64,000 nt of DNA from Setoptus koraiensis. Lineage: Eukaryota; Animalia; Arthropoda. Below the pieces are notes generated by a model that searched no databases, was not told where the DNA came from, and was given only the letters and a program-made list of their open reading frames with translations. The stretch's first letter is position 1; every line of letters begins with the position of its first letter. The position numbers and the translations under genes were made by a program. The stretch covers positions 18,724,001 through 18,788,000 of the forward strand of contig CM106585.1 in NCBI GenBank assembly GCA_048013815.1. The letters run 5' to 3'. Shown one piece after another: positions 48,085 through 62,117 of the stretch.

Positions 48085-49878
48085 TCAGGCAACCATTTCT
48101 TGGAGTTGCACAAAGATAAAAATCAACGATATCTGTTGAGTCAAGACGGAGAAAATTAGTTGCCGCCTGTACTTGGTTCCGGGACCATAGGAAAAGTTTG
48201 CCTGATCCAAGAGGATGCTTATGTGATCGTACTGCACCCAAAGATTCATAGTTTCTGTTATGTAATCGATTTTAGTTTGATTGTGCACCGTGATTGCAAA
48301 AAGTTTGCTGTCTATGCTGCCCCTAATGTGACGTCCACTGCTGTCTAAGTAGTCTTCATGGGTCGTCAGCATCATGTCACAGCATTCTCTTGAGGTGGAC
48401 AAATTCATGTTGAAAAACAAATCCCTCAAGCGTTCCAATTCGCAAGGTAACTGGCCCATGGAGTTAAAATGATACACTACAAGTATGAGAAAAGCCGATG
48501 AAAATAGCACCGCCAATATGGTCTCAGTATAGTAGCGGGCGCTCCATCCTATGGCCCCAATGAGAATGTAAAATGCCACTTGGAGACCCTCCAGCAACAC
48601 TGTCATGTATGTGCCAAAACTAAACAGTGCATTTATCTCGTCGATGGCGTCTTTTATGTCGACCAACATTGTTGTTATTTTCTTGAATCGAAACTGTGAA
48701 AATTTAACGCCACTCAACGAGCCCAGCAGATTATGTTGCTCTATTGACTTGCTGTGACCATCTCTGATTGCCCGGTCTATACTCAAATCTGGCCAATCTA
48801 ACGCAACTCTGCTGGCCAGATCCAACTGTGACTCTGTCATTCTGTTGAGAACATTCTCATCTGTCCACTGATGAATGTGCTTGGCAAAATTCAAGCTTAT
48901 GTAAGAGGCCAACTCAAAGGGCACAAACGTGAGTGAGACCAATATCAGTACGAACATCGCAGACAATATTGACAATATTATTTTTAGCCACATGTCCTCA
49001 TTGAAGTAATGATACACAACGGCAACGGTGGTCACCGGACCCCACAGCAGTAGTCCTATGTGATGATTAGAGAACAGTTTTGCGGCCAGACGAGCTTGCC
49101 AGTCGGCGTCTACATCGACCAGGCCATATCTGGTGATTACTGCGTGTAATTTGTCTCTAAAATGCACTAGTGACAACAGTGTACTCATGTGTTCAAACAG
49201 ATACAATATTGGACTCAACCGGAAACAAATCGATGTTAGAGGATGAGCGGTTATGTAGACAAATCTATCCGTTGTCAGCAATTCTTCGAAGGCGTAATAG
49301 CACACACAGCAAACCGTTATAGCAAACACCGCCGATATTGCGTATATCATTGAGATAGTACTAGGGGACATAAACTTCCCGTTAGCTCTGGTCAGCACCA
49401 TCCAAACAATCCAAGAGAAAGTCAGTGTGTGCATTTTGCCCAATAGAACGGCGCCAGGCGACATGGTCTTGGCCACTGTTTGACAATTTTCTTGGATTTT
49501 GTTTCTCTTGCTTGCCGTTGCGAACCGATCAAACGACAGTCCTGATAGAAACAACAAATCATTTAGGCCCTGCCTTGCGTCGTTCCAGTACTTTCCAAAT
49601 GAGTATCTCATGTAGAGGCTTCTGTTCTGTTGTTGCGACGGGTCCAATTGCCAGCCAATATTGCCAGCTTGACCAGCCTTAAGTTCATCCTTGCCACATT
49701 CATAATCCAATGAATGCTTTCCAGCAATCGCAAATCCCTTGGTATACGCAACATCATCAACACTGGTGATTGTCATCGCTGGCCTGCACGAATTCTGATG
49801 ATACTCGTCAGAGTGATTGCATATCTTTCTATTGCCGAATATTGGTCGCAAAATTTTGGTTAGTTCTAATTTTGGCAT
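48085..49878 (-). CDS. Gustatory receptor family (7TM chemoreceptor), intronless, ~597 aa
   Basis: Multiple hydrophobic helices. The C-terminus FSYGPGTKYRRQLIFSVLTQQISLIFIFVQLQ matches the Gr TM7 pattern (F..R.L..S......Y/I..I..Q). First ATG at 49878; the ORF-track start at 49923 is GTG. Confidence 0.7.
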   Translation of the reverse strand: MPKLELTKILRPIFGNRKICNHSDEYHQNSCRPAMTITSVDDVAYTKGFAIAGKHSLDYECGKDELKAGQAGNIGWQLDPSQQQNRSLYMRYSFGKYWNDARQGLNDLLFLSGLSFDRFATASKRNKIQENCQTVAKTMSPGAVLLGKMHTLTFSWIVWMVLTRANGKFMSPSTISMIYAISAVFAITVCCVCYYAFEELLTTDRFVYITAHPLTSICFRLSPILYLFEHMSTLLSLVHFRDKLHAVITRYGLVDVDADWQARLAAKLFSNHHIGLLLWGPVTTVAVVYHYFNEDMWLKIILSILSAMFVLILVSLTFVPFELASYISLNFAKHIHQWTDENVLNRMTESQLDLASRVALDWPDLSIDRAIRDGHSKSIEQHNLLGSLSGVKFSQFRFKKITTMLVDIKDAIDEINALFSFGTYMTVLLEGLQVAFYILIGAIGWSARYYTETILAVLFSSAFLILVVYHFNSMGQLPCELERLRDLFFNMNLSTSRECCDMMLTTHEDYLDSSGRHIRGSIDSKLFAITVHNQTKIDYITETMNLWVQYDHISILLDQANFSYGPGTKYRRQLIFSVLTQQISLIFIFVQLQEMVA

Positions 49879-50587
49879 GCTGCTAGATTGTTTGTGCCTG
49901 CTGATCACTTTCACTGTTCGCACTAAATCACGACAATATTACAAAGTGTCGCATTGGCCACATTCTAGATCCGGTCTCGACGATGTTTTAAGGGTCTAAT
50001 GCCAGCAAACTGGGAGCAATAGTTTGCTTGAATGAGAGCCTCATGTGCAAACAGAGAATAAGTGCATTTCCCTCAACTTTTGCGTCCCTTCATTAGATAG
50101 TCGTCGTCGATGAGAAGTGTTTGCAATCTCAAAGCTCGCTTTTCTGTGGGCCCCATACTCGATCAAGTACTTCGAAACTACCACCGCTATCATTGTCGGA
50201 GCTGTCACGCAGATTCAAGTTATAATAATGTATTATACGATTTATTATACCGATTAAAGGAGACAAGAGACTTAACGAGAAAGAGAATCGAATAGCGTGA
50301 CTAAACGTGATCTTTTCCCAGACAGAAGATCAGACATTTCGCTCGAAAGCACTCAATAAAAGAGGACCTTAATATCTAGGTACATGGTAGTGATTGGAGG
50401 GGCACCCCTCTCCGATTCGGGAAGAAGAAGCGAATCGGGGAGTAAGATATTCGCCGCTCCCCGACCAATCTTTGAGAACATCTGGAAATGTTTTCAAAAA
50501 AAAAAAAAATGTTTCAAAATTCGCGCCTATATATATTGACTTTGCTCAATGATTGGTACACCCGTCTGGAAAATTGCCGACTAACAC

Positions 50588-50644
50588 ATGGCCCAGCTCC
50601 TCATCTCTAAACGTGATAAACAAAAAGGGCAAGCTATTGCTCAG
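50588..50644 (+). CDS. THOC1: THOC1 putative exon 1, derived from RpS7 exon 1
   Basis: ATG...GCTCAG|GTACAT encodes MAQLLISKRDKQKGQAIAQ. An 88-nt intron (50645-50732) ending CCACAG splices in frame to the THOC1 ORF. 39 of the first 48 nt match RpS7 exon 1. Confidence 0.65.
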
Positions 50645-50732
50645 GTACATAGACCATAAGGATCATCCGACAACTTACACACATTCGATAGATATTTAAC
50701 AAATTACCGTCCTCATTCTTATCCAACCACAG

Positions 50733-52100
50733 CCGTCAACTGACATGGAACAGAACACTGTGACAAAATCCGAAAAAACTATTGCTCAGGTACATAGATT
50801 ATGTGACACATTGGACACTCAAACTATCACCGAATGCAAAGAAACATTTGCACAATTGGAGGAAGAACTGCAAGAGCATAAGGAATCGTCTCCCAGGACC
50901 TATCTAATAAGGGCTTGTTGCGATCTACTTCGAAGAGTCAATAGCCAAGTTGACCCAGAATTTGCCGGTAGAATACTTATCTTTTTAGCAAGGTTATTAC
51001 CCATCTTTGATCCATCAGGTTATAATGATACAGAGTTCAATTTTTTAGAAATACACAAGTACACTGCTGTGGAAACTCAAGATGACAGTGATAAAAAACA
51101 ACTCTCAATAACAGACTTCACTCAAGATGATCTTCACGATGATATCGAAGAGGGCGAAACTATAGACGGCGAAGAAGAGCAGCCTCTGGTTAAGTCGTTC
51201 ATTGAATCAGATGAAAAGTTATCCGAGAGATTCTGGAAACTCCAAGAGTACCTCAGAAATCCCATGGTTTTATTCGAAAAATCGACATGGTTCCTATTTC
51301 GATCACATATAGATGCTTTATTATCAATGTTTGAAGCAAACCCAACAAGTGTTGGTGTTTGGTGTCTGACATCCAACTACCTTATCGAACCAAGATCGCT
51401 TGCGAGACTACTTCGTGATGGAAATCTTAGAAGATGTTTTCTAGTTCAGGTATTGATCATATTCAAATGGTTAGCTACCCCAAATCAATCCAAATTCAAA
51501 CGTGAGAATCAAAAGCTCGACAAAAGTGGGCTAATTTGGATCGACTCCACCTCAAAAAGAATCCACAGAGTTCTATCAAATACTCCTAAAGATGATGGTG
51601 GAGAAGCTTTTGACAAGTATATCAACCATGTCCTTCTACACGAGGAGCAATGGGTCTCTTGGATGAGCAAGACATTAAAAGAGAGAAGTGAAGATTATCC
51701 CAAGCCGATGGATGATGAGCCAGTCAGAATGCGATCTACATACAAAATGAAACGCAACATAGGTGAAGAACTGCGCAGTGCCGAACAAATCAATATGCAC
51801 CTGGTTGGAAGCAAAGAATTGAACAAGCTTTGGAACTACATACCGGATAACTGGGAGGCTTGTAAGTCGAGTGAAAGGATTAATGTACCAAGTTTAAAAG
51901 ACTTCTTCGAGAAGGCATCCCAATCATCACCTGAGCAGAGAAAAGAAATATTTAAAGACCCCAGCTTTAACTTTAGAGCCCTACGTTTGCTCAGTAGACA
52001 GAGCAATGACTTTATAACGCCGTCCTCGGCAGTTATTGTAGAAATCGATACATATCTGAGTAATGTGACAGACGTTATGTGTAAGAAAGGATTTAATTAA
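50733..52100 (+). CDS. THOC1: THO complex subunit 1 (Hpr1), main exon; native N-terminal ~90 aa and C-terminal death domain not seen
   Basis: YLIRACCDLLRRVNSQVDPEFAGRILIFLARLLPIFDPSGYN and GSKELNKLWNYIPDNWEAC...PSLKDFFE...FRALRLLSR match remembered THOC1 motifs (LLRMCNDLLRR...FCGRIQLFLARLFP; LTRLWN...RALRLLAR). Confidence 0.9.
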   Translation, partial: PSTDMEQNTVTKSEKTIAQVHRLCDTLDTQTITECKETFAQLEEELQEHKESSPRTYLIRACCDLLRRVNSQVDPEFAGRILIFLARLLPIFDPSGYNDTEFNFLEIHKYTAVETQDDSDKKQLSITDFTQDDLHDDIEEGETIDGEEEQPLVKSFIESDEKLSERFWKLQEYLRNPMVLFEKSTWFLFRSHIDALLSMFEANPTSVGVWCLTSNYLIEPRSLARLLRDGNLRRCFLVQVLIIFKWLATPNQSKFKRENQKLDKSGLIWIDSTSKRIHRVLSNTPKDDGGEAFDKYINHVLLHEEQWVSWMSKTLKERSEDYPKPMDDEPVRMRSTYKMKRNIGEELRSAEQINMHLVGSKELNKLWNYIPDNWEACKSSERINVPSLKDFFEKASQSSPEQRKEIFKDPSFNFRALRLLSRQSNDFITPSSAVIVEIDTYLSNVTDVMCKKGFN

Positions 52101-52121
52101 TTAAAGCCCCATTCAGTACAT

Positions 52122-52350
52122 TCAAAATAAAGGCTCTGGGAACTCAAATGTGACTTCCTTTCCTGTAAGCTTCTTATACACAGACACGAAAGTTGGTATT
52201 TTGTGTTCCACGAATGTCTGATTTCCTTTGTCTAGATGCACTTTAGTTAATTTAGATCCGTCCATTTTAATACGAAATCTCTTTCCTACTATCTCAGCTG
52301 GGTATACCAGGTCCTCGAGGATTGCATCGTGTACTGAGGTCAGAGTTCGG
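52122..52350 (-). CDS. RpS7: 40S ribosomal protein S7 (eS7) exon 3
   Basis: TATAG| acceptor. (S)[41 protein letters not shown]...[18 protein letters not shown]. Confidence 0.97.
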
Positions 52351-52613
52351 CTATAAGTTTATTCAACATAGAAATTGGTTGAGAATAGAAAAGATGATGA
52401 GATTAGATTTAGTCAGTTGATGAGGCCATGACGTATTAACAAGTTGATAAAGGGGGTCCACAGAAAGATTTTTTTTGATAGAGCACACTGTCCGTGCGTT
52501 ATATAGCCTTGTCTTGGGCTGCCCTCGGTAAGAAATTGCACCGAAAGTTGAGGTCCACTCATTGAGTAATGCACTGTGGAAGCTACAGTAGGTGAATATG
52601 TGCAGTAACTAAC

Positions 52614-52888
52614 CTTCTGGGTCTCTTCTGTTTGTTTGTACTATTCTTTCTTGATTGTTTTGGCAAAATAGTTCTTCTTGCGATGACAACGACGTGTTTG
52701 CCGGAGAATTTCTTCTCTAACTCGCGCACAATTCTTGCCTGAATTTTCTGAAAGCCTTTTAGTTGTGGGTATGGCACCCAGATGATGATAGCTTTCTTTC
52801 CCTTAGCCTCGACCTCTTTAGCTCCACATATTTGCAACTCACGGAGTTGAGGCTTTAGGTCGGTACTCTGTTCCAGGTCGGTTAATGC
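52614..52888 (-). CDS. RpS7: 40S ribosomal protein S7 exon 2
   Basis: CTCAG| acceptor, AG|GTTAGT donor. [26 protein letters not shown]...[20 protein letters not shown]...QKRPR. Confidence 0.97.
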
Positions 52889-52972
52889 CTGAGGGTGGAT
52901 GGATAAGGAAAATTGTTAGAAATTTATCGATAGTCAGGTGTGAGAGTTACAGGACCATGGTGATATACATAC

Positions 52973-53050
52973 CTGAGCAACAGTCTTTTCAAATTTTGCT
53001 ACAGCTTGCCCTTTGGGCTTAACAATTTTAGAGATGAGAGGCAGGGCCAT
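52973..53050 (-). CDS. RpS7: 40S ribosomal protein S7 exon 1
   Basis: MALPLISKIVKPKGQAVAKFEKTVAQ|GTATGT. The three exons total 582 nt, or 193 aa plus stop. Confidence 0.95.
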
Positions 53051-53603
53051 GTTCGATGGTACACCAATTGATATTACTAATAATGATGGGGCTCCTTTAG
53101 ACGTTTGTGGTAAATGTGAAAAAATCTAATAAAGAGTCTCGATCTAGTATTTCAGAATCAGTGTGCAGGACAGTGGCAAAGAATACTTCTTCCGCTGATG
53201 CACATGCCATTCGCTGTGCACGCCTGGCCGCCGGCTACTGCTGTGTAAAAGCTCACTCACACACATGCAAATGCCCAGTGCGCAGGCTCAGAGCATCTTT
53301 GCGCGAACTTTAAAACAACTTATTTTTTTCTTTAGTAGTAACGTCCGATCCCAGCACAGCCATTGGCGGTGGCAGCACTGATGGCAACCCAGTTTTGTTC
53401 GTCATTTGAGCGCCTTTTTTTCTGTGCGATTTGATTTTAGCGCACTTTGTTCTCGTAAACCTATCCAACGGTTATTCTGGTCACTGTTGACACAACAGAC
53501 ATTCGCGGTGAATGCCTATGCCGAGTGGTCTAATATATTGTTTGTAATCACTCAAACTCATTATTTTACCCGACTATTATTATTATCAATTATTATTACT
53601 ACC
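53051..53603. promoter_or_regulatory. Head-to-head RpS7 / CENP-C intergenic region (probable shared promoter)
   Basis: 553 bp between divergent start codons; no specific motif demonstrated. Confidence 0.4.
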
Positions 53604-55280
53604 ATGGAGAACGAACCCAATTGGTTGGTCCAGATGAAGGCGCTCAAAGAGAGAAACAAACGCCGTCCTTTTAGGCAGTCCAACACTTGGACCAAATTTA
53701 CCGAAGCTGTGGTGCAACAGATGCATCTTGATATGCCAAAACTATTAGAGGATTCAAATGAAAATCATGGCAGTGCTATATTTGACCACACTCCCATGAT
53801 CGCAGAGGAAATTCAACATGAATCGGACCTATCTGGAGTTTCCGATCAAGCGGACGACCATGAAAGCATCATAGATCATGCTCCCATCATTGATGAAGAA
53901 AGCGAACACGAGTCAAGCCAATCTGATTCTATAATCGAAAAGATGCCAATTGTACAGTCCCAGATTGAAAATACTCATGATAACAATGGAAGCTTCATCA
54001 TGGACCATTCTCCTATCATTGCCGAGGAAAGCAACCACGAATCAGACATATCTGGTGTTCCCGATCAAGTGGACGATCATGAAAGCATCATAGATCATAC
54101 TCCCGTCATTGCAGAGGAAAGCATCCACGAGTCCAACACATCTCACTCAATGAGCGATGGAGAAGCGGATGAAGATGAGCCGTCGACCGCTCATCTTCAG
54201 GTGGAAAAATCCATTCGTAATGCCAGCAAGCGCAGCTTCACCTCAGACCATACTTCAGTCATCGCCGAGGACAGCAACCGCGAGTCCAACATATCTCACC
54301 CAATTAGCGATGACAGTGACGATGAGCCGTCGACCGCTCATCTTCAAGTGGAGAAATCCATTCGTGATGCCAGTAAGCGCAGCTTCACCACCGACCATAC
54401 TTCAGTCATCGCTGAGGACAGCAACCACGAGTCCAACATATCTCATTCAATGAGCGATGACGGTGAGGACGAGCTGTCGACCGCTCATATTCAGGTGGAA
54501 AAATCCATTCGTAATGCCAGTAAGCGCAGCTTCACCACCGACCATACTCCAGTCATCGCCGAGGGCAGCAACCGCAAGTCCAACAGATCTCACTCAATGA
54601 GCGATGACAGTGACCATGAGCCGTTGACCGCTCATCTTCAGGTGGAAAAATCCATTCGTAATGCCAGTAAGCGCAGCCCCGAACCCGTGATTGAAAATCC
54701 CCCGGAAGAACCCGCTGAGTGTGATGTTCCTGGTACGGTGCCAGGCATCAGACGATCCACTCGTCAGCGAAGGCCGCCTGGAGAATTTTGGCGAGGCGAG
54801 AGGCCGAAGTATGATAGCACGTTGACTTACGTTGGCAATCAGCCTGCTCGTCCAATTTACGACTATTCAAGAAAACAAAAACGTCCGTCTAACCTGCCAC
54901 CCAGAGGTCCCAGTGAAAAGAAATATAAAGTTCCTGCGGGATGCGTCGTGCCTCCAGATTATGAGTACCAAAAATCCAGAACAGGAGAGTTTGATTTGGT
55001 CACGTTAAATCTCAATGGAATGATTTATGGAAAGATGATTTTAGACCCGGGAAAGCGAAAGCAAGAAACAAAAATCGCCATCAACCTATTATACAATTTT
55101 TTCGTACTACGTGGTCGTGTGATGTTCAAGAACAAGACCCCCAAAACTACCAAATATTATATCGATGACAGCCCCCGAAAATCCGCCCTCCAACTCAAAG
55201 GTGGGACCTCGTATTCCATAACGAATGTCGGCGAAGAGCCAGCTCACATTTTGTACTGGACCATTGCAGAAGATCTATGA
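53604..55280 (+). CDS. CENP-C: Centromere protein C (CENP-C/Mif2), intronless, ~558 aa
   Basis: CENP-C motif RRSTRQRRPPGEFWRGERPKY (54750-54812). C-terminal cupin (YGKMILDPG...FFVLRGRV...YSITNVGEEPAHILY). N-terminal LKERNKRRPF resembles the Mis12-binding motif. ATG at 53604; the ORF-track start is TTG. Confidence 0.88.
   Translation: MENEPNWLVQMKALKERNKRRPFRQSNTWTKFTEAVVQQMHLDMPKLLEDSNENHGSAIFDHTPMIAEEIQHESDLSGVSDQADDHESIIDHAPIIDEESEHESSQSDSIIEKMPIVQSQIENTHDNNGSFIMDHSPIIAEESNHESDISGVPDQVDDHESIIDHTPVIAEESIHESNTSHSMSDGEADEDEPSTAHLQVEKSIRNASKRSFTSDHTSVIAEDSNRESNISHPISDDSDDEPSTAHLQVEKSIRDASKRSFTTDHTSVIAEDSNHESNISHSMSDDGEDELSTAHIQVEKSIRNASKRSFTTDHTPVIAEGSNRKSNRSHSMSDDSDHEPLTAHLQVEKSIRNASKRSPEPVIENPPEEPAECDVPGTVPGIRRSTRQRRPPGEFWRGERPKYDSTLTYVGNQPARPIYDYSRKQKRPSNLPPRGPSEKKYKVPAGCVVPPDYEYQKSRTGEFDLVTLNLNGMIYGKMILDPGKRKQETKIAINLLYNFFVLRGRVMFKNKTPKTTKYYIDDSPRKSALQLKGGTSYSITNVGEEPAHILYWTIAEDL
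53688..54170 (+). repeat. Coding DH(T/S/A)PxIxEESxHES repeat block shared with 61110-61820
   Basis: 30-aa and 43-aa unit variants. Positions 53984-54081 are identical to the reverse complement of 61382-61479. Confidence 0.92.
54174..54678 (+). repeat. Coding 147-bp (49-aa) tandem repeat, ~3.4 copies, in CENP-C
   Basis: Units start at 54174, 54321, 54468 and 54615 (DEPSTAHLQVEKSIRNASKRSFT.DHT.VIAE.SN.ESN.SH..SDD). Confidence 0.95.
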
Positions 55281-59642: not shown

Positions 59643-62117
59643 TCATAAAGTATTATTGTGAATGTAACCCTGTTGCTGGTCATAATAGGGGACGTTTTGC
59701 TGTTGGTAATGATATTCTGGAATAGGGGGTGCATTCATCGGTAAAGGTGGAGGTAGGTCGGCATATGATGAATCGCTCAAAACTTCATCCAGCATTCCAT
59801 TAAAACCACCACTGATCGAACCTGAGTCTACAAACATAGATTCATCCAGATAACCGAGCCTCTTTTTCAGTGATGCTATCTCGTTTCTAACATGCTCCTC
59901 TTTCTGACGAGTATTCTGTGCGTGATTCAGGTTCGCGTCTACCTGTGTCTGGCATAGATTTATCCTCTCTGGCCAATTATCTCGCTCCAATTGGGATCTT
60001 AGATAGTCTCTCTCGCTATTTAAACTACTATTCGCTTCCTCTGCCTGCCTGAGAAGATCCTCGATTTGCGAGACTCTCATATCGAAATTCTCTTTTCTAC
60101 CCTTTAGAGAGTTCAGTCTTTCTGTCCTGATTTTATCTTTTATGCTCAATTGCTCCTTTTCCACCTCGGATATTTGGGTCAACTCAATGATTTTTTCATC
60201 GAGTTTTTCATACTTAACATCTAATTCGCATTTCAAATGTTTCAATTGTCTCAATTTGGACATAGATTGTTCCGTCTTTGTATCACATTTTGATAGTTGT
60301 ACTTTCAACTGCTCTAGACTAGAGTCGAGACTCACTTTTTTGCGTCTATAGTTAGTGAGCAAGTTTCCTACATCTGTCGGACATTCCTTCAAAATATCAG
60401 CCATAGTCTCACGCATAGTTTTGAGGGTGTCAATTTTGATATTAAGGTCTTTAACTTCTTTGAGGTCTTCCCTTGAGTAACTATTCGTTGTAGCCAACTC
60501 TGTCACACTCGACCTTATTTTCTTGAATTCATTGGAAAGCAAAGCAATTCTATGAGATCGTTCATCCTTCTCTTTAGATAGGTCTTGCACCTTAGTTGAC
60601 AATTCCTGCACCTCATCTGGATCAACAAATACTAAGTTCTCATGTTTAGAATCCAGACATCTTATTGAATTTAATTTAATAGAGATTTCGTTGTCAACCT
60701 CACACAGTTGAGCCGATAGCAAGCTCTTTTCTTGAGTATGAGATTCAAGATCTTCCTTCAATCGTCTCAACTGATCGTTTTGTTCAATGTTGTCTTTCTT
60801 AATCACATCTTGATGAGCTTTGAGAGCTGCCAAATGGGCAATATTTCGAGTTTTTTCATCAATCTCATGTTTGAGAGTTTCCAATAGAGCAGGGTTTCGA
60901 GTTTTGTCACCATGTTTCATATTATTATTTTGCTCCAGCATTTGTCTTAGCTCAGTTAATTTTCTATTTTTCACCTGAAAATCCTTCTCGGATAGTGAGG
61001 AATGCTTCGAACGACTGAAATAGAGTCTTATTAAATCTGATACAAAAAGAATCACGAGGGCCATACCTAAGGATTGGATTTTAGGTGTGAAGTCTTGGCT
61101 GGAATTCTCGGATATGTTTGGCTCGTGGTTGTTCTCCTCAGCAATAATATAAGCATGGTCTATGTCAGCGCTTGCAGAATTATCATCGCGAATAGCATTT
61201 TCAACATGGGTCCTGTCGATTACAGGATCAGATGTGCTTGATTCGTGGCTGCTTTCCTCGGAAATGACGGGAGTATGATCTATGATGCTTTCATGATCGT
61301 CCACTTGATCGGGAACACCAGATGTGTCTGATTCGTGGTTGCTTTCCTCGGAAATCACGGGAGTATGATCTATGATGCTTCCATGATCGTCCACTTGATC
61401 GGGAACACCAGATATGTCTGATTCGTGGTTGCTTTCCTCGGCAATGATAGGAGAATGGTCCATGATGAAGCTTCCATTGGCTTCATGAATAGTGTTTTCA
61501 ATCTGGCGATGTACAATTGGTATCTCTTCAGTCGTGGAACCAGACATGCTTGACTCCTGGTGGCCTTCTTCATCAACGATGGGAGCATCGTCCATGATGA
61601 AGCTTCCATTGTTATCATGAGCATTTTCAATCTGGGGCTCTACAATCGGCGTCTTTTCGATTATAGAATCAGATTGGCTTGACTCGTGTTTGCTTTCTTC
61701 TGTAATCATTGGAGCATGCTTCTTGAAAGCGCCTCCATGATTATCATTAGAAGCCTCTGATAGTTTTGGCGTATCGATATTCATCGGTTGCTCAACATGG
61801 TCGGTAGATTTGGCCCGATCAAAGAGTCCTTTATCAAGATCCCAATCGCTATCATCGTTAGAATCGAGCTCGTCGTCTTCGTATGACATATCTGGTGGAG
61901 GATTATAAATCGGATGATAGTTGAGTGAAACATTTTCGCTGGCCTCTATTGCAATGTCATACACGGGCACAGTTGGCGTTTTCGTTTGAGTTCCGAGTTG
62001 ACTATTCAAGGGACGCGTTATATATTCGGCTCGTAGAGATTCTGCCTCATTTTGGAACCAGAGTGTGACTGAATATAATATTATAAATAAGGTAACAGAT
62101 GTATGACTAGGCCCCAT
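59643..62117 (-). CDS. TANGO1/cTAGE5 (MIA2/3)-like type I membrane protein, ~824 aa (tentative)
   Basis: Signal-peptide-like N-terminus, acidic luminal region, TM LGMALVILFVSDLIRLYF, ~400-aa coiled coil and a PPP-containing tail. The segment LRSQLER...I...DANLNHA...RNEIASLKKRL resembles the remembered cTAGE5 CC2 end. No SH3 domain seen. Confidence 0.55.
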   Translation of the reverse strand: MGPSHTSVTLFIILYSVTLWFQNEAESLRAEYITRPLNSQLGTQTKTPTVPVYDIAIEASENVSLNYHPIYNPPPDMSYEDDELDSNDDSDWDLDKGLFDRAKSTDHVEQPMNIDTPKLSEASNDNHGGAFKKHAPMITEESKHESSQSDSIIEKTPIVEPQIENAHDNNGSFIMDDAPIVDEEGHQESSMSGSTTEEIPIVHRQIENTIHEANGSFIMDHSPIIAEESNHESDISGVPDQVDDHGSIIDHTPVISEESNHESDTSGVPDQVDDHESIIDHTPVISEESSHESSTSDPVIDRTHVENAIRDDNSASADIDHAYIIAEENNHEPNISENSSQDFTPKIQSLGMALVILFVSDLIRLYFSRSKHSSLSEKDFQVKNRKLTELRQMLEQNNNMKHGDKTRNPALLETLKHEIDEKTRNIAHLAALKAHQDVIKKDNIEQNDQLRRLKEDLESHTQEKSLLSAQLCEVDNEISIKLNSIRCLDSKHENLVFVDPDEVQELSTKVQDLSKEKDERSHRIALLSNEFKKIRSSVTELATTNSYSREDLKEVKDLNIKIDTLKTMRETMADILKECPTDVGNLLTNYRRKKVSLDSSLEQLKVQLSKCDTKTEQSMSKLRQLKHLKCELDVKYEKLDEKIIELTQISEVEKEQLSIKDKIRTERLNSLKGRKENFDMRVSQIEDLLRQAEEANSSLNSERDYLRSQLERDNWPERINLCQTQVDANLNHAQNTRQKEEHVRNEIASLKKRLGYLDESMFVDSGSISGGFNGMLDEVLSDSSYADLPPPLPMNAPPIPEYHYQQQNVPYYDQQQGYIHNNTL
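61110..61820 (-). repeat. Coding repeat block homologous to the CENP-C repeat block
   Basis: IDTPKLSEASNDNHG...ESSQSDSIIEK.PIV..QIEN.HDNNGSFIMDHSPIIAEESNHESDISGVPDQVDDH aligns with 53688-54450 in inverted orientation. Confidence 0.92.

What the first reader, a model, noticed from the sequence alone, without database searches (positions are those of the whole stretch)
50588..53050. THOC1 has a 5' end copied from its neighbour RpS7 (chimeric gene)
Seen in sequence: + strand 50588-50798 is a diverged inverted copy of the RpS7 5' end (- strand, 53050-52862). (a) ATG GCC CAG CTC CTC ATC TCT AAA CGT GAT AAA CAA AAA GGG CAA GCT vs RpS7 ATG GCC CTG CCT CTC ATC TCT AAA ATT GTT AAG CCC AAA GGG CAA GCT, 39/48 identical. 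(b) Both end GCT CAG|GTA. (c) The introns align (tcgatagatatttaacaa / tcgataaatttctaacaa; cttatccaaccac / cttatccatccac). (d) The exon-2 starts align: PSTDMEQNT vs ALTDLEQST. (e) A second partial copy (TVTKSEKTIAQ vs AVAKFEKTVAQ, 26/33 nt) carries the 21 nt missing from the first copy. The 88-nt intron keeps its splice signals and the frame, and THOC1 homology starts only afterwards (LCDTLD, about human residue 95). Inference: an essential mRNA-export factor replaced its native N-terminus, and perhaps its promoter and translational control, with those of a ribosomal protein gene. A staggered-break inversion or a non-reciprocal templated copy could do this. The inversion model predicts that the orphaned native THOC1 5' end lies upstream of RpS7; a 37-aa - strand ORF at 53097-53210 is a weak candidate.
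Basis: partly seen in the sequence, partly recalled or inferred. Interest (0 to 1): 0.9.

Follow-up and report, generated by a model that had tools for sequence, protein, structure and literature searches.

The report
THOC1 leader copied from neighbouring RpS7

Summary
Window 50546-50800 (+) is a diverged inverted copy of the RpS7 5' end (- strand, 53074-52862): exon 1 lacking 21 nt, intron 1, 27 nt of exon 2, and a second piece of exon 1. The alignment scores z = 16.7 against shuffles, and a DNA contig spans both arms.

- RNA contigs from two runs splice both RpS7 introns but run colinear through the copied 88-nt "intron" (50629-50884, 50668-50968). The copied donor has lost its +5 G.
- The working ORF therefore most likely starts at ATG 50745. 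That codon is the conserved RpS7 Leu codon CTG changed to ATG.
- Only about 15-17 N-terminal residues are RpS7-derived. The exon-1 ATG (50588) would head a 23-codon uORF if it is transcribed at all.
- The missing ~95-residue N-terminus and the death domain are also missing in the closest relatives (35-40% identity). They were not lost in this event.
- No orphan THOC1 5' end was found.

Origin by a staggered-break micro-inversion or by a templated copy cannot be told apart with these tools. Earlier, unchecked notes of this scan report many similar inverted copies of a neighbour's 5' end elsewhere in this genome. This is a new member of a known kind, of moderate interest.

The parts
50453..50526 (+). 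Possible outer block of the left arm: weak similarity to DNA upstream of RpS7 (53376-53301), ending in TGTTTCAAAATTCGCGC
   Evidence: Local alignment z = 4.7, with 1 of 400 shuffles reaching the score. The 17-mer occurs only at these two places in the window, even allowing 3 mismatches. The other seven TTCGCGC sites in the window have unrelated contexts. A blastn match of 54 nt overlaps this block (50498-50551 against the DNA upstream of RpS7, E = 0.013). Suggestive only.
50546..50587 (+). Start of the clear homology: CTCAATGATTGGTACACC, matching ATCAATTGGTGTACC at 53074-53060, followed by about 25 nt without a counterpart, up to ACATG
   Evidence: Alignment.
50588..50644 (+). Copy of RpS7 exon 1 (57 nt, with an in-frame 21-nt gap). 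In the unspliced RNA its ATG would head a 23-codon uORF that ends at 50657-50659
   Evidence: 39/48 identity. uORF translation. RNA coverage is documented only from 50629.
50645..50732 (+). Copy of RpS7 intron 1 (88 nt; donor GTACAT, acceptor CCACAG). It is retained in the RNA contigs
   Evidence: Intron-only alignment z = 7.1. X10 contig 50629-50884 and X12 contig 50668-50968 are colinear, and no joint is reported here. The donor has lost its +5 G.
50733..50759 (+). Copy of the first 27 nt of RpS7 exon 2. It holds ATG 50745, which is the RpS7 Leu codon CTG changed to ATG
   Evidence: 19/27 identity. The Leu is conserved in solved eS7 proteins.
50758..50799 (+). Second partial copy: the last 33 nt of RpS7 exon 1 plus 9 nt of the intron start. 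It is read in the RpS7 frame as TVTKSEKTIAQVH and fused to the THOC1 body
   Evidence: 33/42 identity, z = 10.4. A 20-nt stretch is identical to 50634-50653.
50745..52100 (+). THOC1 ORF (451 aa, short form without a death domain). THOC1 homology begins at about residue 15-17 (VHRLCDTLDTQTITEC)
   Evidence: Pfam efThoc1, E = 5e-52. Alignment A1. All 150 listed library hits align from query residue 11 or later. Patchy RNA coverage in X10 and X12.
52122..53050 (-). RpS7 (eS7) coding region: exon 1 53050-52973, intron 52972-52889, exon 2 52888-52614, intron 52613-52351, exon 3 52350-52122. It encodes 193 aa
   Evidence: Both introns appear as spliced joints in RNA runs X1, X10 and X12. The CDS translates without a break. 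Pfam Ribosomal_S7e, E = 3e-34. Solved eS7 structures, E = 2e-33.
52862..53074 (-). Right arm, the parental copy: the last ~24 nt of the RpS7 5'UTR, exon 1, intron 1 and the first 27 nt of exon 2
53051..53166 (-). RpS7 5'UTR as far as the RNA contigs reach (at least 116 nt)
   Evidence: Contig ends at 53163 (X10), 53166 (X12) and 53134 (X1).
53301..53376 (-). Possible outer block of the right arm, the counterpart of 50453-50526

Best explanation
An old inverted partial duplicate of the RpS7 5' end is fused to the start of the convergent neighbour gene THOC1. The clear homology covers about 210-255 nt. It may have been about 515 nt if the weak upstream block belongs to it. The arms are about 20-30% diverged.

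Shown:
- The copy comprises RpS7 exon 1 (minus 21 nt), intron 1, 27 nt of exon 2, and a second fragment of the exon-1 end with the intron start.
- It is transcribed as part of the THOC1 mRNA.
- In the assembled RNA of two runs the copied intron is not removed.

Inferred:
- THOC1 is translated from ATG 50745. This start codon was created inside the exon-2-derived piece by CTG to ATG.
- The protein therefore carries only a 15-17 residue RpS7-derived tag (MEQNTVTKSEKTIAQ, then VH from the intron-start bases) in front of a normal, lineage-typical short THOC1.
- The exon-1 copy and the intron copy now serve as leader or promoter DNA. If the transcription start lies upstream of 50588, the former RpS7 ATG, which sits in a strong context, heads a 23-codon uORF.
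- A likely history: at birth the copy was splice-competent, and the in-frame fusion from the RpS7 ATG kept THOC1 translatable. The new ATG then made splicing dispensable, and the donor decayed from GTATGT to GTACAT.

Origin: either a ~2.5-kb micro-inversion with staggered breaks at the RpS7 5' end, or a templated replicative copy. The two are not resolved here.
For: - Homology and its direction.
- RNA: X10 record 3 (50629-50884) and X12 record 8 (50668-50968) are colinear with the genome, with no mismatches and no joint. Their depth (2.1 and 8.9) is similar to the contigs of the THOC1 body (3.0-3.3 and 7.2). The same runs splice both RpS7 introns and show zero depth in RpS7 intron 2 (52462-52582), at 49800-50525 and beyond 53188, so this is not genomic DNA or abundant pre-mRNA.
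- The same sequence CAGGTACATAGA lies inside the CDS at 50783-50794 and is also read through in both contigs.
- The donor has lost the +5 G that both confirmed local donors keep.
- In the unspliced RNA there is an in-frame stop at 50697, and the ATG at 50745 is the first in frame. The next Met is about 170 codons downstream.
- THOC1 homology starts at about residue 15-17.
- Relatives have short, variable N-termini. P0002 starts MSNW, with an in-frame stop upstream.
- None of 163 THOC1 homologues has an RpS7-like N-terminus.
Against: - Logan contigs drop rare variants, and short dead-end branches may be clipped, so a spliced isoform cannot be excluded.
- Depth over the THOC1 5' end is low (2-9).
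- No raw reads, strand information or 5'-end data were available. The transcription start is known only to lie at or upstream of 50629.
- The exon-1 copy is still an open frame, its 21-nt gap is a multiple of three, and GT..AG and a branch-point-like TTAAC survive. These features are what selection on a spliced form would leave. By chance alone, a 19-codon open frame has a probability of roughly 0.4.
- Translation from 50745 is inferred, not observed.
Confidence: 0.7

Rival explanations
1. One reading: the copied exon 1 is spliced in frame to 50733, and THOC1 is made with a 36-residue RpS7-derived N-terminus starting at ATG 50588.
For: The spliced model is in frame and open. GT..AG, a polypyrimidine-rich acceptor and TTAAC are kept. 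The 21-nt gap keeps the frame. The X10 contig reaches 16 nt upstream of the donor, so part of exon 1 is transcribed.
Against: No joint at 50644/50733 appears in any of the four runs, whereas both RpS7 joints are found in all three RNA runs. The intron sequence is present at body-like depth in two runs. The donor is weakened to GTACAT, and the identical sequence inside the CDS is not spliced either. The exon-1 copy differs from RpS7 mostly by non-synonymous changes, 5 of 6 changed codons (read).
Confidence: 0.15
2. The copy is mainly promoter DNA. THOC1 transcription starts between 50589 and 50629, so the former RpS7 ATG is never in the mRNA and there is no uORF. The RpS7-derived DNA acts as a captured core promoter plus a short leader.
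For: RNA contigs begin at 50629 and 50668, and none reaches 50588. The distance from the shared upstream block to the first RNA is similar on both sides: 50526 to 50629 is 103 nt, and 53301 to 53166 is 135 nt.
Against: Contig ends at depth 2-9 say little about the true 5' end. A TATATATA at 50529-50537 would predict a start near 50560, upstream of the ATG (read). The upstream homology is weak (z = 4.7).
Confidence: 0.35
3. The inverted repeat is an assembly artefact or a chance similarity.
For: None found.
Against: z = 16.7 against shuffles. One DNA contig spans 50497-53400. Both arms are transcribed in different RNAs. The arms are 20-30% diverged, unlike a mis-join.
Confidence: 0.02

Closest known systems
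Inverted duplications at inversion breakpoints made by staggered breaks (Ranz et al. 2007, PLoS Biol, PMC1885836)
   Same: Two inverted copies of a unique genic sequence flank a short segment. The arm length (about 210-515 nt) falls within the reported range (46 bp to 1.9 kb, median 321 bp). One copy stays in the intact parent gene and the other decays.
   Different: No outgroup is available to show that the 2.3-kb segment between the arms is actually inverted. The decayed copy was not left as junk but became the working 5' end of another gene. The left arm has an internal rearrangement: a 21-nt gap, a second fragment and a perfect 20-mer repeat.
Chimeric genes formed by partial gene duplication or 5'-end capture, such as the Drosophila chimeric genes of the jingwei type (from my own knowledge, not checked here)
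   Same: A recipient gene takes its leader, start codon and N-terminal codons from a duplicated fragment of another gene.
   Different: The donor is the immediate convergent neighbour and the copy is inverted. The contribution to the protein is tiny (about 15 residues, not a domain). The start codon in use arose by a point change within the captured piece, not from the donor's ATG.
Other inverted copies of a neighbour's 5' end noted by this scan in the same genome (POLG/OPA3, MTERF3/MRPL13, IleRS/MRPL14, NOP2 and SLC30A9 with eIF3b/MRPL22)
   Same: The same genome, the same geometry (a flipped partial copy of a neighbour's front end fused at or near the recipient's start), and an essential housekeeping recipient.
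   Different: Those are AI notes that I did not re-test. In this case the captured intron is retained, and the donor's own ATG is probably not the start.

Membership tests
Chimeric gene by partial duplication (5'-end capture) | A segment homologous to the 5' end of an intact parent gene, beyond chance | tested here: met
   z = 16.7. Separate blocks score z = 7.1 and 10.4. The RpS7 CDS is intact and spliced.
Chimeric gene by partial duplication (5'-end capture) | Direction of copying shown by conservation of the parent | tested here: met
   RpS7 exon 2 matches solved eS7 proteins from its first residue, with Leu where THOC1 has Met. THOC1 homologues do not match the first ~15 residues.
Chimeric gene by partial duplication (5'-end capture) | The captured piece is part of the recipient's transcript | tested here: met
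   RNA contigs 50629-50884 and 50668-50968 run from the copy into the THOC1 body. Contigs carry no strand information.
Chimeric gene by partial duplication (5'-end capture) | The captured piece contributes coding sequence to the recipient protein | tested here: inconclusive
   The only plausible ATG (50745) and the next 15-17 codons lie in the captured piece. Translation itself was not observed.
   No joint at 50644/50733 in four runs, and the intron is retained in two RNA runs. The data are contigs only, so a minor isoform is not excluded.
Staggered-break inversion with flanking inverted duplication | Inverted copies of unique sequence at both ends of a segment, in the known size range | tested here: met
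   Arms at 50546-50800 and 53074-52862. Size range from PMC1885836.
Staggered-break inversion with flanking inverted duplication | The segment between the arms is inverted relative to an outgroup, and the recipient's old 5' end lies beyond the far arm | not testable with these tools
   No relative closer than 40% protein identity was found. In P0001's contig THOC1 is followed by a Prp31-like gene, not RpS7. No orphan THOC1 N-terminus was found in the window, but the native N-terminus may have been only a few codons long.
THOC1 (efThoc1, PF11957) | A match to the family profile above the curated cut-off | tested here: met
   177.6 bits against a cut-off of 27.
THOC1 (efThoc1, PF11957) | The C-terminal death domain of the insect and vertebrate proteins | tested here: not met
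   No PF00531 hit, and the ORF ends about 30 residues after the efThoc1 region. P0001, P0002 and P0014-P0016 end in the same way.
uORF-regulated mRNA leader | The upstream ATG is present in the mature mRNA | tested here: inconclusive
   The uORF 50588-50659 exists in the DNA. RNA is documented only from 50629.

The most novel reading that the evidence does not exclude
This locus is one instance of a recurrent process across this very compact mite genome. In that process, small rearrangements (staggered-break micro-inversions or template switches) duplicate a gene's promoter and 5' module in mirror orientation and give the neighbouring essential gene a new front end. Here THOC1 would run from a copy of the ribosomal-protein promoter and leader, and the former RpS7 start would now act as a regulatory uORF.
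Probability: 0.3. Interest if true: 0.6.

Novelty: new member of a known kind. Interest (0 to 1): 0.35.

Why it matters
The locus shows, step by step, how a rearrangement that cuts an essential gene at its start can be survived. A captured neighbour's 5' module keeps the gene translatable. A point change then makes a new start codon, and the captured intron and original ATG decay into leader sequence.

As a single case it is a tidy example of a known way of making chimeric genes, and it has little consequence for the THOC1 protein itself. Its wider value depends on the other cases noted in this genome. If they hold up, they would document how gene starts are replaced in an extremely streamlined animal genome.

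Tried and rejected
1. Orphan native THOC1 5' end. tblastn of the N-termini of five THOC1 homologues against the whole window gave nothing better than E = 0.15. The 37-aa ORF at 53097-53210 has no THOC1 similarity (E > 1), and 53097-53166 of it lies inside the RpS7 5'UTR. Rejected.

2. Closer relatives to date the event. The word-based search and the exhaustive representative search found nothing above 40% identity. The window's own THOC1 is not on record in the contig collection. DNA for P0001's contig could not be fetched. Synteny and age therefore could not be tested.

3. The upstream block as a general promoter module. The other seven TTCGCGC sites in the window have unrelated contexts, so the similarity is specific to the two arms. 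It remains statistically weak.

4. Homology beyond 50800 into the THOC1 body: none (z = -0.8).

5. Genomic DNA or pre-mRNA as the source of the unspliced contigs. Rejected, because RpS7 intron 2 and the intergenic DNA have zero depth in the same runs.

6. RNA runs X1-X6 hold only RpS7 and say nothing about THOC1.

7. A literature search for this phenomenon in eriophyoid genomes found only the Aculops lycopersici genome paper, where the search term 'inversion' does not occur at all and 'chimeric' occurs once.
Full report
**What is there**

The region holds two convergent genes.
- On the + strand, an ORF of 451 codons (50745-52100) matches the THOC1 family profile efThoc1 (E = 5e-52).
- On the - strand lies a three-exon RpS7 (eS7) gene: exon 1 53050-52973, exon 2 52888-52614, exon 3 52350-52122. 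It encodes 193 aa. It matches Pfam Ribosomal_S7e (3e-34) and solved eS7 chains (2e-33).
- The two stop codons are 21 nt apart.

- A local alignment of 50480-50830 (+) against the reverse complement of 52820-53160 scores 67.7. Five hundred dinucleotide-preserving shuffles give 16.8 ± 3.1, so z = 16.7.
- The pieces are the top inverted repeats reported by the repeat finder (I1, I2, I3, I6).
- Each piece is significant on its own. ATG..GCT is 39/48 identical. The intron scores z = 7.1. The exon-2 start is 19/27 identical. The second fragment is 33/42 identical, z = 10.4.
- Homology stops at about 50800; beyond that z = -0.8.
- No other RpS7 fragment exists in the window.
- Clear homology starts about 40 nt upstream of the copied ATG, where CTCAATGATTGGTACACC matches ATCAATTGGTGTACC.
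- A weaker block further out, 50453-50526 against 53376-53301, ends in a 15/17 match of TGTTTYAAARTTCGCGC. It scores z = 4.7 and occurs only at these two places in the window.
- If that block is homologous, the duplicated unit was about 515 nt. About 225 nt of it, including the region where RpS7 RNA begins, would then be missing from the THOC1 side.
- A single DNA contig of run X9 spans 50497-53400, so the arrangement is not a mis-join. That run may be the assembly's own sample.

**Direction of copying**

RpS7 exon 2 aligns from its first residue with mammalian eS7: [18 protein letters not shown] against ALLELEMNSDLKAQLREL. RpS7 is therefore the parent. The THOC1 start codon ATG at 50745 sits at the conserved Leu codon (CTG in RpS7), so it is a derived change in the copy.

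**RNA evidence**

The look-up of sequencing runs returned runs of uncertain kind. X10 and X12 proved to be RNA, because their contigs join 52350 to 52614 and 52888 to 52973. These are the two RpS7 introns, with GT..AG ends on the - strand.

In those runs depth is zero in RpS7 intron 2 (bin 52462-52582), upstream of 50526 and beyond 53188. Genomic DNA and pre-mRNA are therefore negligible.

In the same runs the THOC1 5' end is covered by contigs that are colinear with the genome:
- X10 record 3 covers 50629-50884, at depth 2.1.
- X12 record 8 covers 50668-50968, at depth 8.9.

Both run through the proposed 88-nt intron (50645-50732), at depths like those of the THOC1 body contigs (3.0-3.3 and 7.2). 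No joint at 50644/50733 was reported in any run.

The copied donor is CAG|GTACAT, whereas both confirmed local donors keep a G at +5 (GTATGT, GTTAGT). The identical 12-mer inside the CDS (50783-50794) is also read through.

The main THOC1 mRNA therefore most likely keeps the copied intron.

Caveats. These are assembler contigs at low depth. They drop minor variants, carry no strand information, and do not define the transcription start, which lies at or upstream of 50629.

**Consequence for the protein**

- In the unspliced RNA the frame of the main ORF is closed by TAA at 50697, and the first in-frame ATG is at 50745. The next Met is about 170 codons later. 50745 is therefore the likely start.
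- The first 15 residues, MEQNTVTKSEKTIAQ, come from the exon-2 start and the second exon-1 fragment, read in RpS7's own frame. The next two, VH, come from the copied intron start.
- THOC1 homology begins right there. VHRLCDTLDTQTITEC aligns with SNWTDDCFSSLTIEEC (P0002), LKWAEDQFSTLTIEEC (P0001) and VMLLSDMFDALTLNLC (Nasonia).
- All 150 listed hits of the exhaustive search align from query residue 11-26 onward.
- If it is transcribed, ATG 50588 (context ACACATGG) heads a 23-codon uORF that ends at 50657-50659.

**What the event did not do**

The nearest homologues are 35-40% identical and come from Logan assemblies (P0001, P0002, P0014-P0016). They are short forms of 406-551 aa. They start only 3-40 residues before the LT(I/L)EEC motif and have no death domain. 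P0002's start is confirmed by an in-frame stop upstream.

The absence of the ~95-residue N-terminus of the human and insect proteins is therefore lineage-wide and was not caused by the RpS7 copy. The native sequence displaced here may have been little more than the start codon. None of 163 THOC1 homologues has an RpS7-like N-terminus.

**Origin**

The geometry, with inverted copies of unique genic DNA flanking a 2.3-kb segment, fits the staggered-break inversion model. In that model arms range from 46 bp to 1.9 kb, with a median of 321 bp (PMC1885836).

The model predicts that THOC1's former 5' end lies beyond the RpS7-side arm. Nothing recognisable is there, but the native N-terminus may have been too short to find.

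A templated or replicative copy gives the same end state. The internal complexity of the left arm hints at template switching or at later local events:
- a 21-nt gap flanked by CTGT and CTGT;
- a second fragment joined after 27 nt of exon 2;
- a perfect 20-nt direct repeat, CTATTGCTCAGGTACATAGA, at 50634 and 50779. It differs from RpS7 at 4 of 20 positions.

I could not separate the two models, because no close relative is available.

The exon-derived parts are 18-30% diverged. The intron aligns only with several gaps and looks more diverged. This is as expected if the left copy drifts roughly neutrally while RpS7's exons are constrained (my inference). A plausible history, which is inference, is given in the best explanation above.

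**Context**

- The compact gene spacing, the few and short introns, the two large sequence pieces and the ~34-Mb extent implied by the scan's index fit an eriophyoid mite. The comparison is with Aculops lycopersici: 32.5 Mb and 84% intronless genes (PMC7738191). The species is not identified.
- Earlier notes of this scan report many similar inverted copies of a neighbour's 5' end in the same genome. I did not re-test them. They make a recurrent process plausible, but they are not independent evidence for this locus.

**Verdict**

This is a real, old chimeric 5' end of a known evolutionary kind. The proposed spliced fusion protein and the "replaced N-terminus" are not supported. Capture of the RpS7 promoter is weakly suggested.

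Noticed in passing
window 52098-52131: The THOC1 stop (52098-52100) and the RpS7 stop (52122-52124, - strand) are 21 nt apart. An AATAAA for THOC1 (52126-52131) lies antisense within the last RpS7 codons. The X10 RpS7 contig runs on to 51953, inside the THOC1 CDS, so the 3' ends of the two transcripts overlap or abut.
   Followed up: partly
window 50634-50653 and 50779-50798: A perfect 20-nt direct repeat, CTATTGCTCAGGTACATAGA. Both copies of the RpS7 exon-1/intron junction in the THOC1 leader are identical to each other, yet each differs from RpS7 at 4 of 20 positions. This implies a later local duplication, a conversion, or constraint.
   Followed up: partly
window 50420-50526: DNA contigs of run X9 break here. 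50420-50451 is shared with a different 26-kb contig, so it is a short dispersed repeat. Depth doubles in this bin, and the A-run near 50496 is length-polymorphic (1 nt left out in part of the reads).
   Followed up: no
window 53051-53190 (- strand): The RpS7 5'UTR is at least 116 nt long (RNA contigs reach 53163-53166) and has no upstream ATG. A TCT-initiator-like TTCTTTGCC lies at 53184-53176, 10-20 nt beyond the contig ends, and is a candidate transcription start.
   Followed up: no
window 53689-54677 and 61111-61816: The CENP-C-like ORF (53406-55280; weak Pfam CENP-C_C hit) holds 147-nt tandem coding repeats. It shares a block of about 500-700 nt, in inverted orientation and at 74-89% identity, with a gene about 7 kb downstream. 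This is a second inverted-copy pair right next to the RpS7/THOC1 pair.
   Followed up: no
window 52269, 52805, 52847, 53070: The RpS7 contigs of RNA run X1 (organism A) differ from the window at four transitions, while X10 and X12 (organism B) are identical to it. These are probably strain or host-race differences rather than editing.
   Followed up: no
window 48085-49923 (- strand): A 612-codon ORF, divergent from THOC1, has no Pfam match. It shows no RNA coverage over its first ~120 nt (49800-49923) in the runs that were laid.
   Followed up: no
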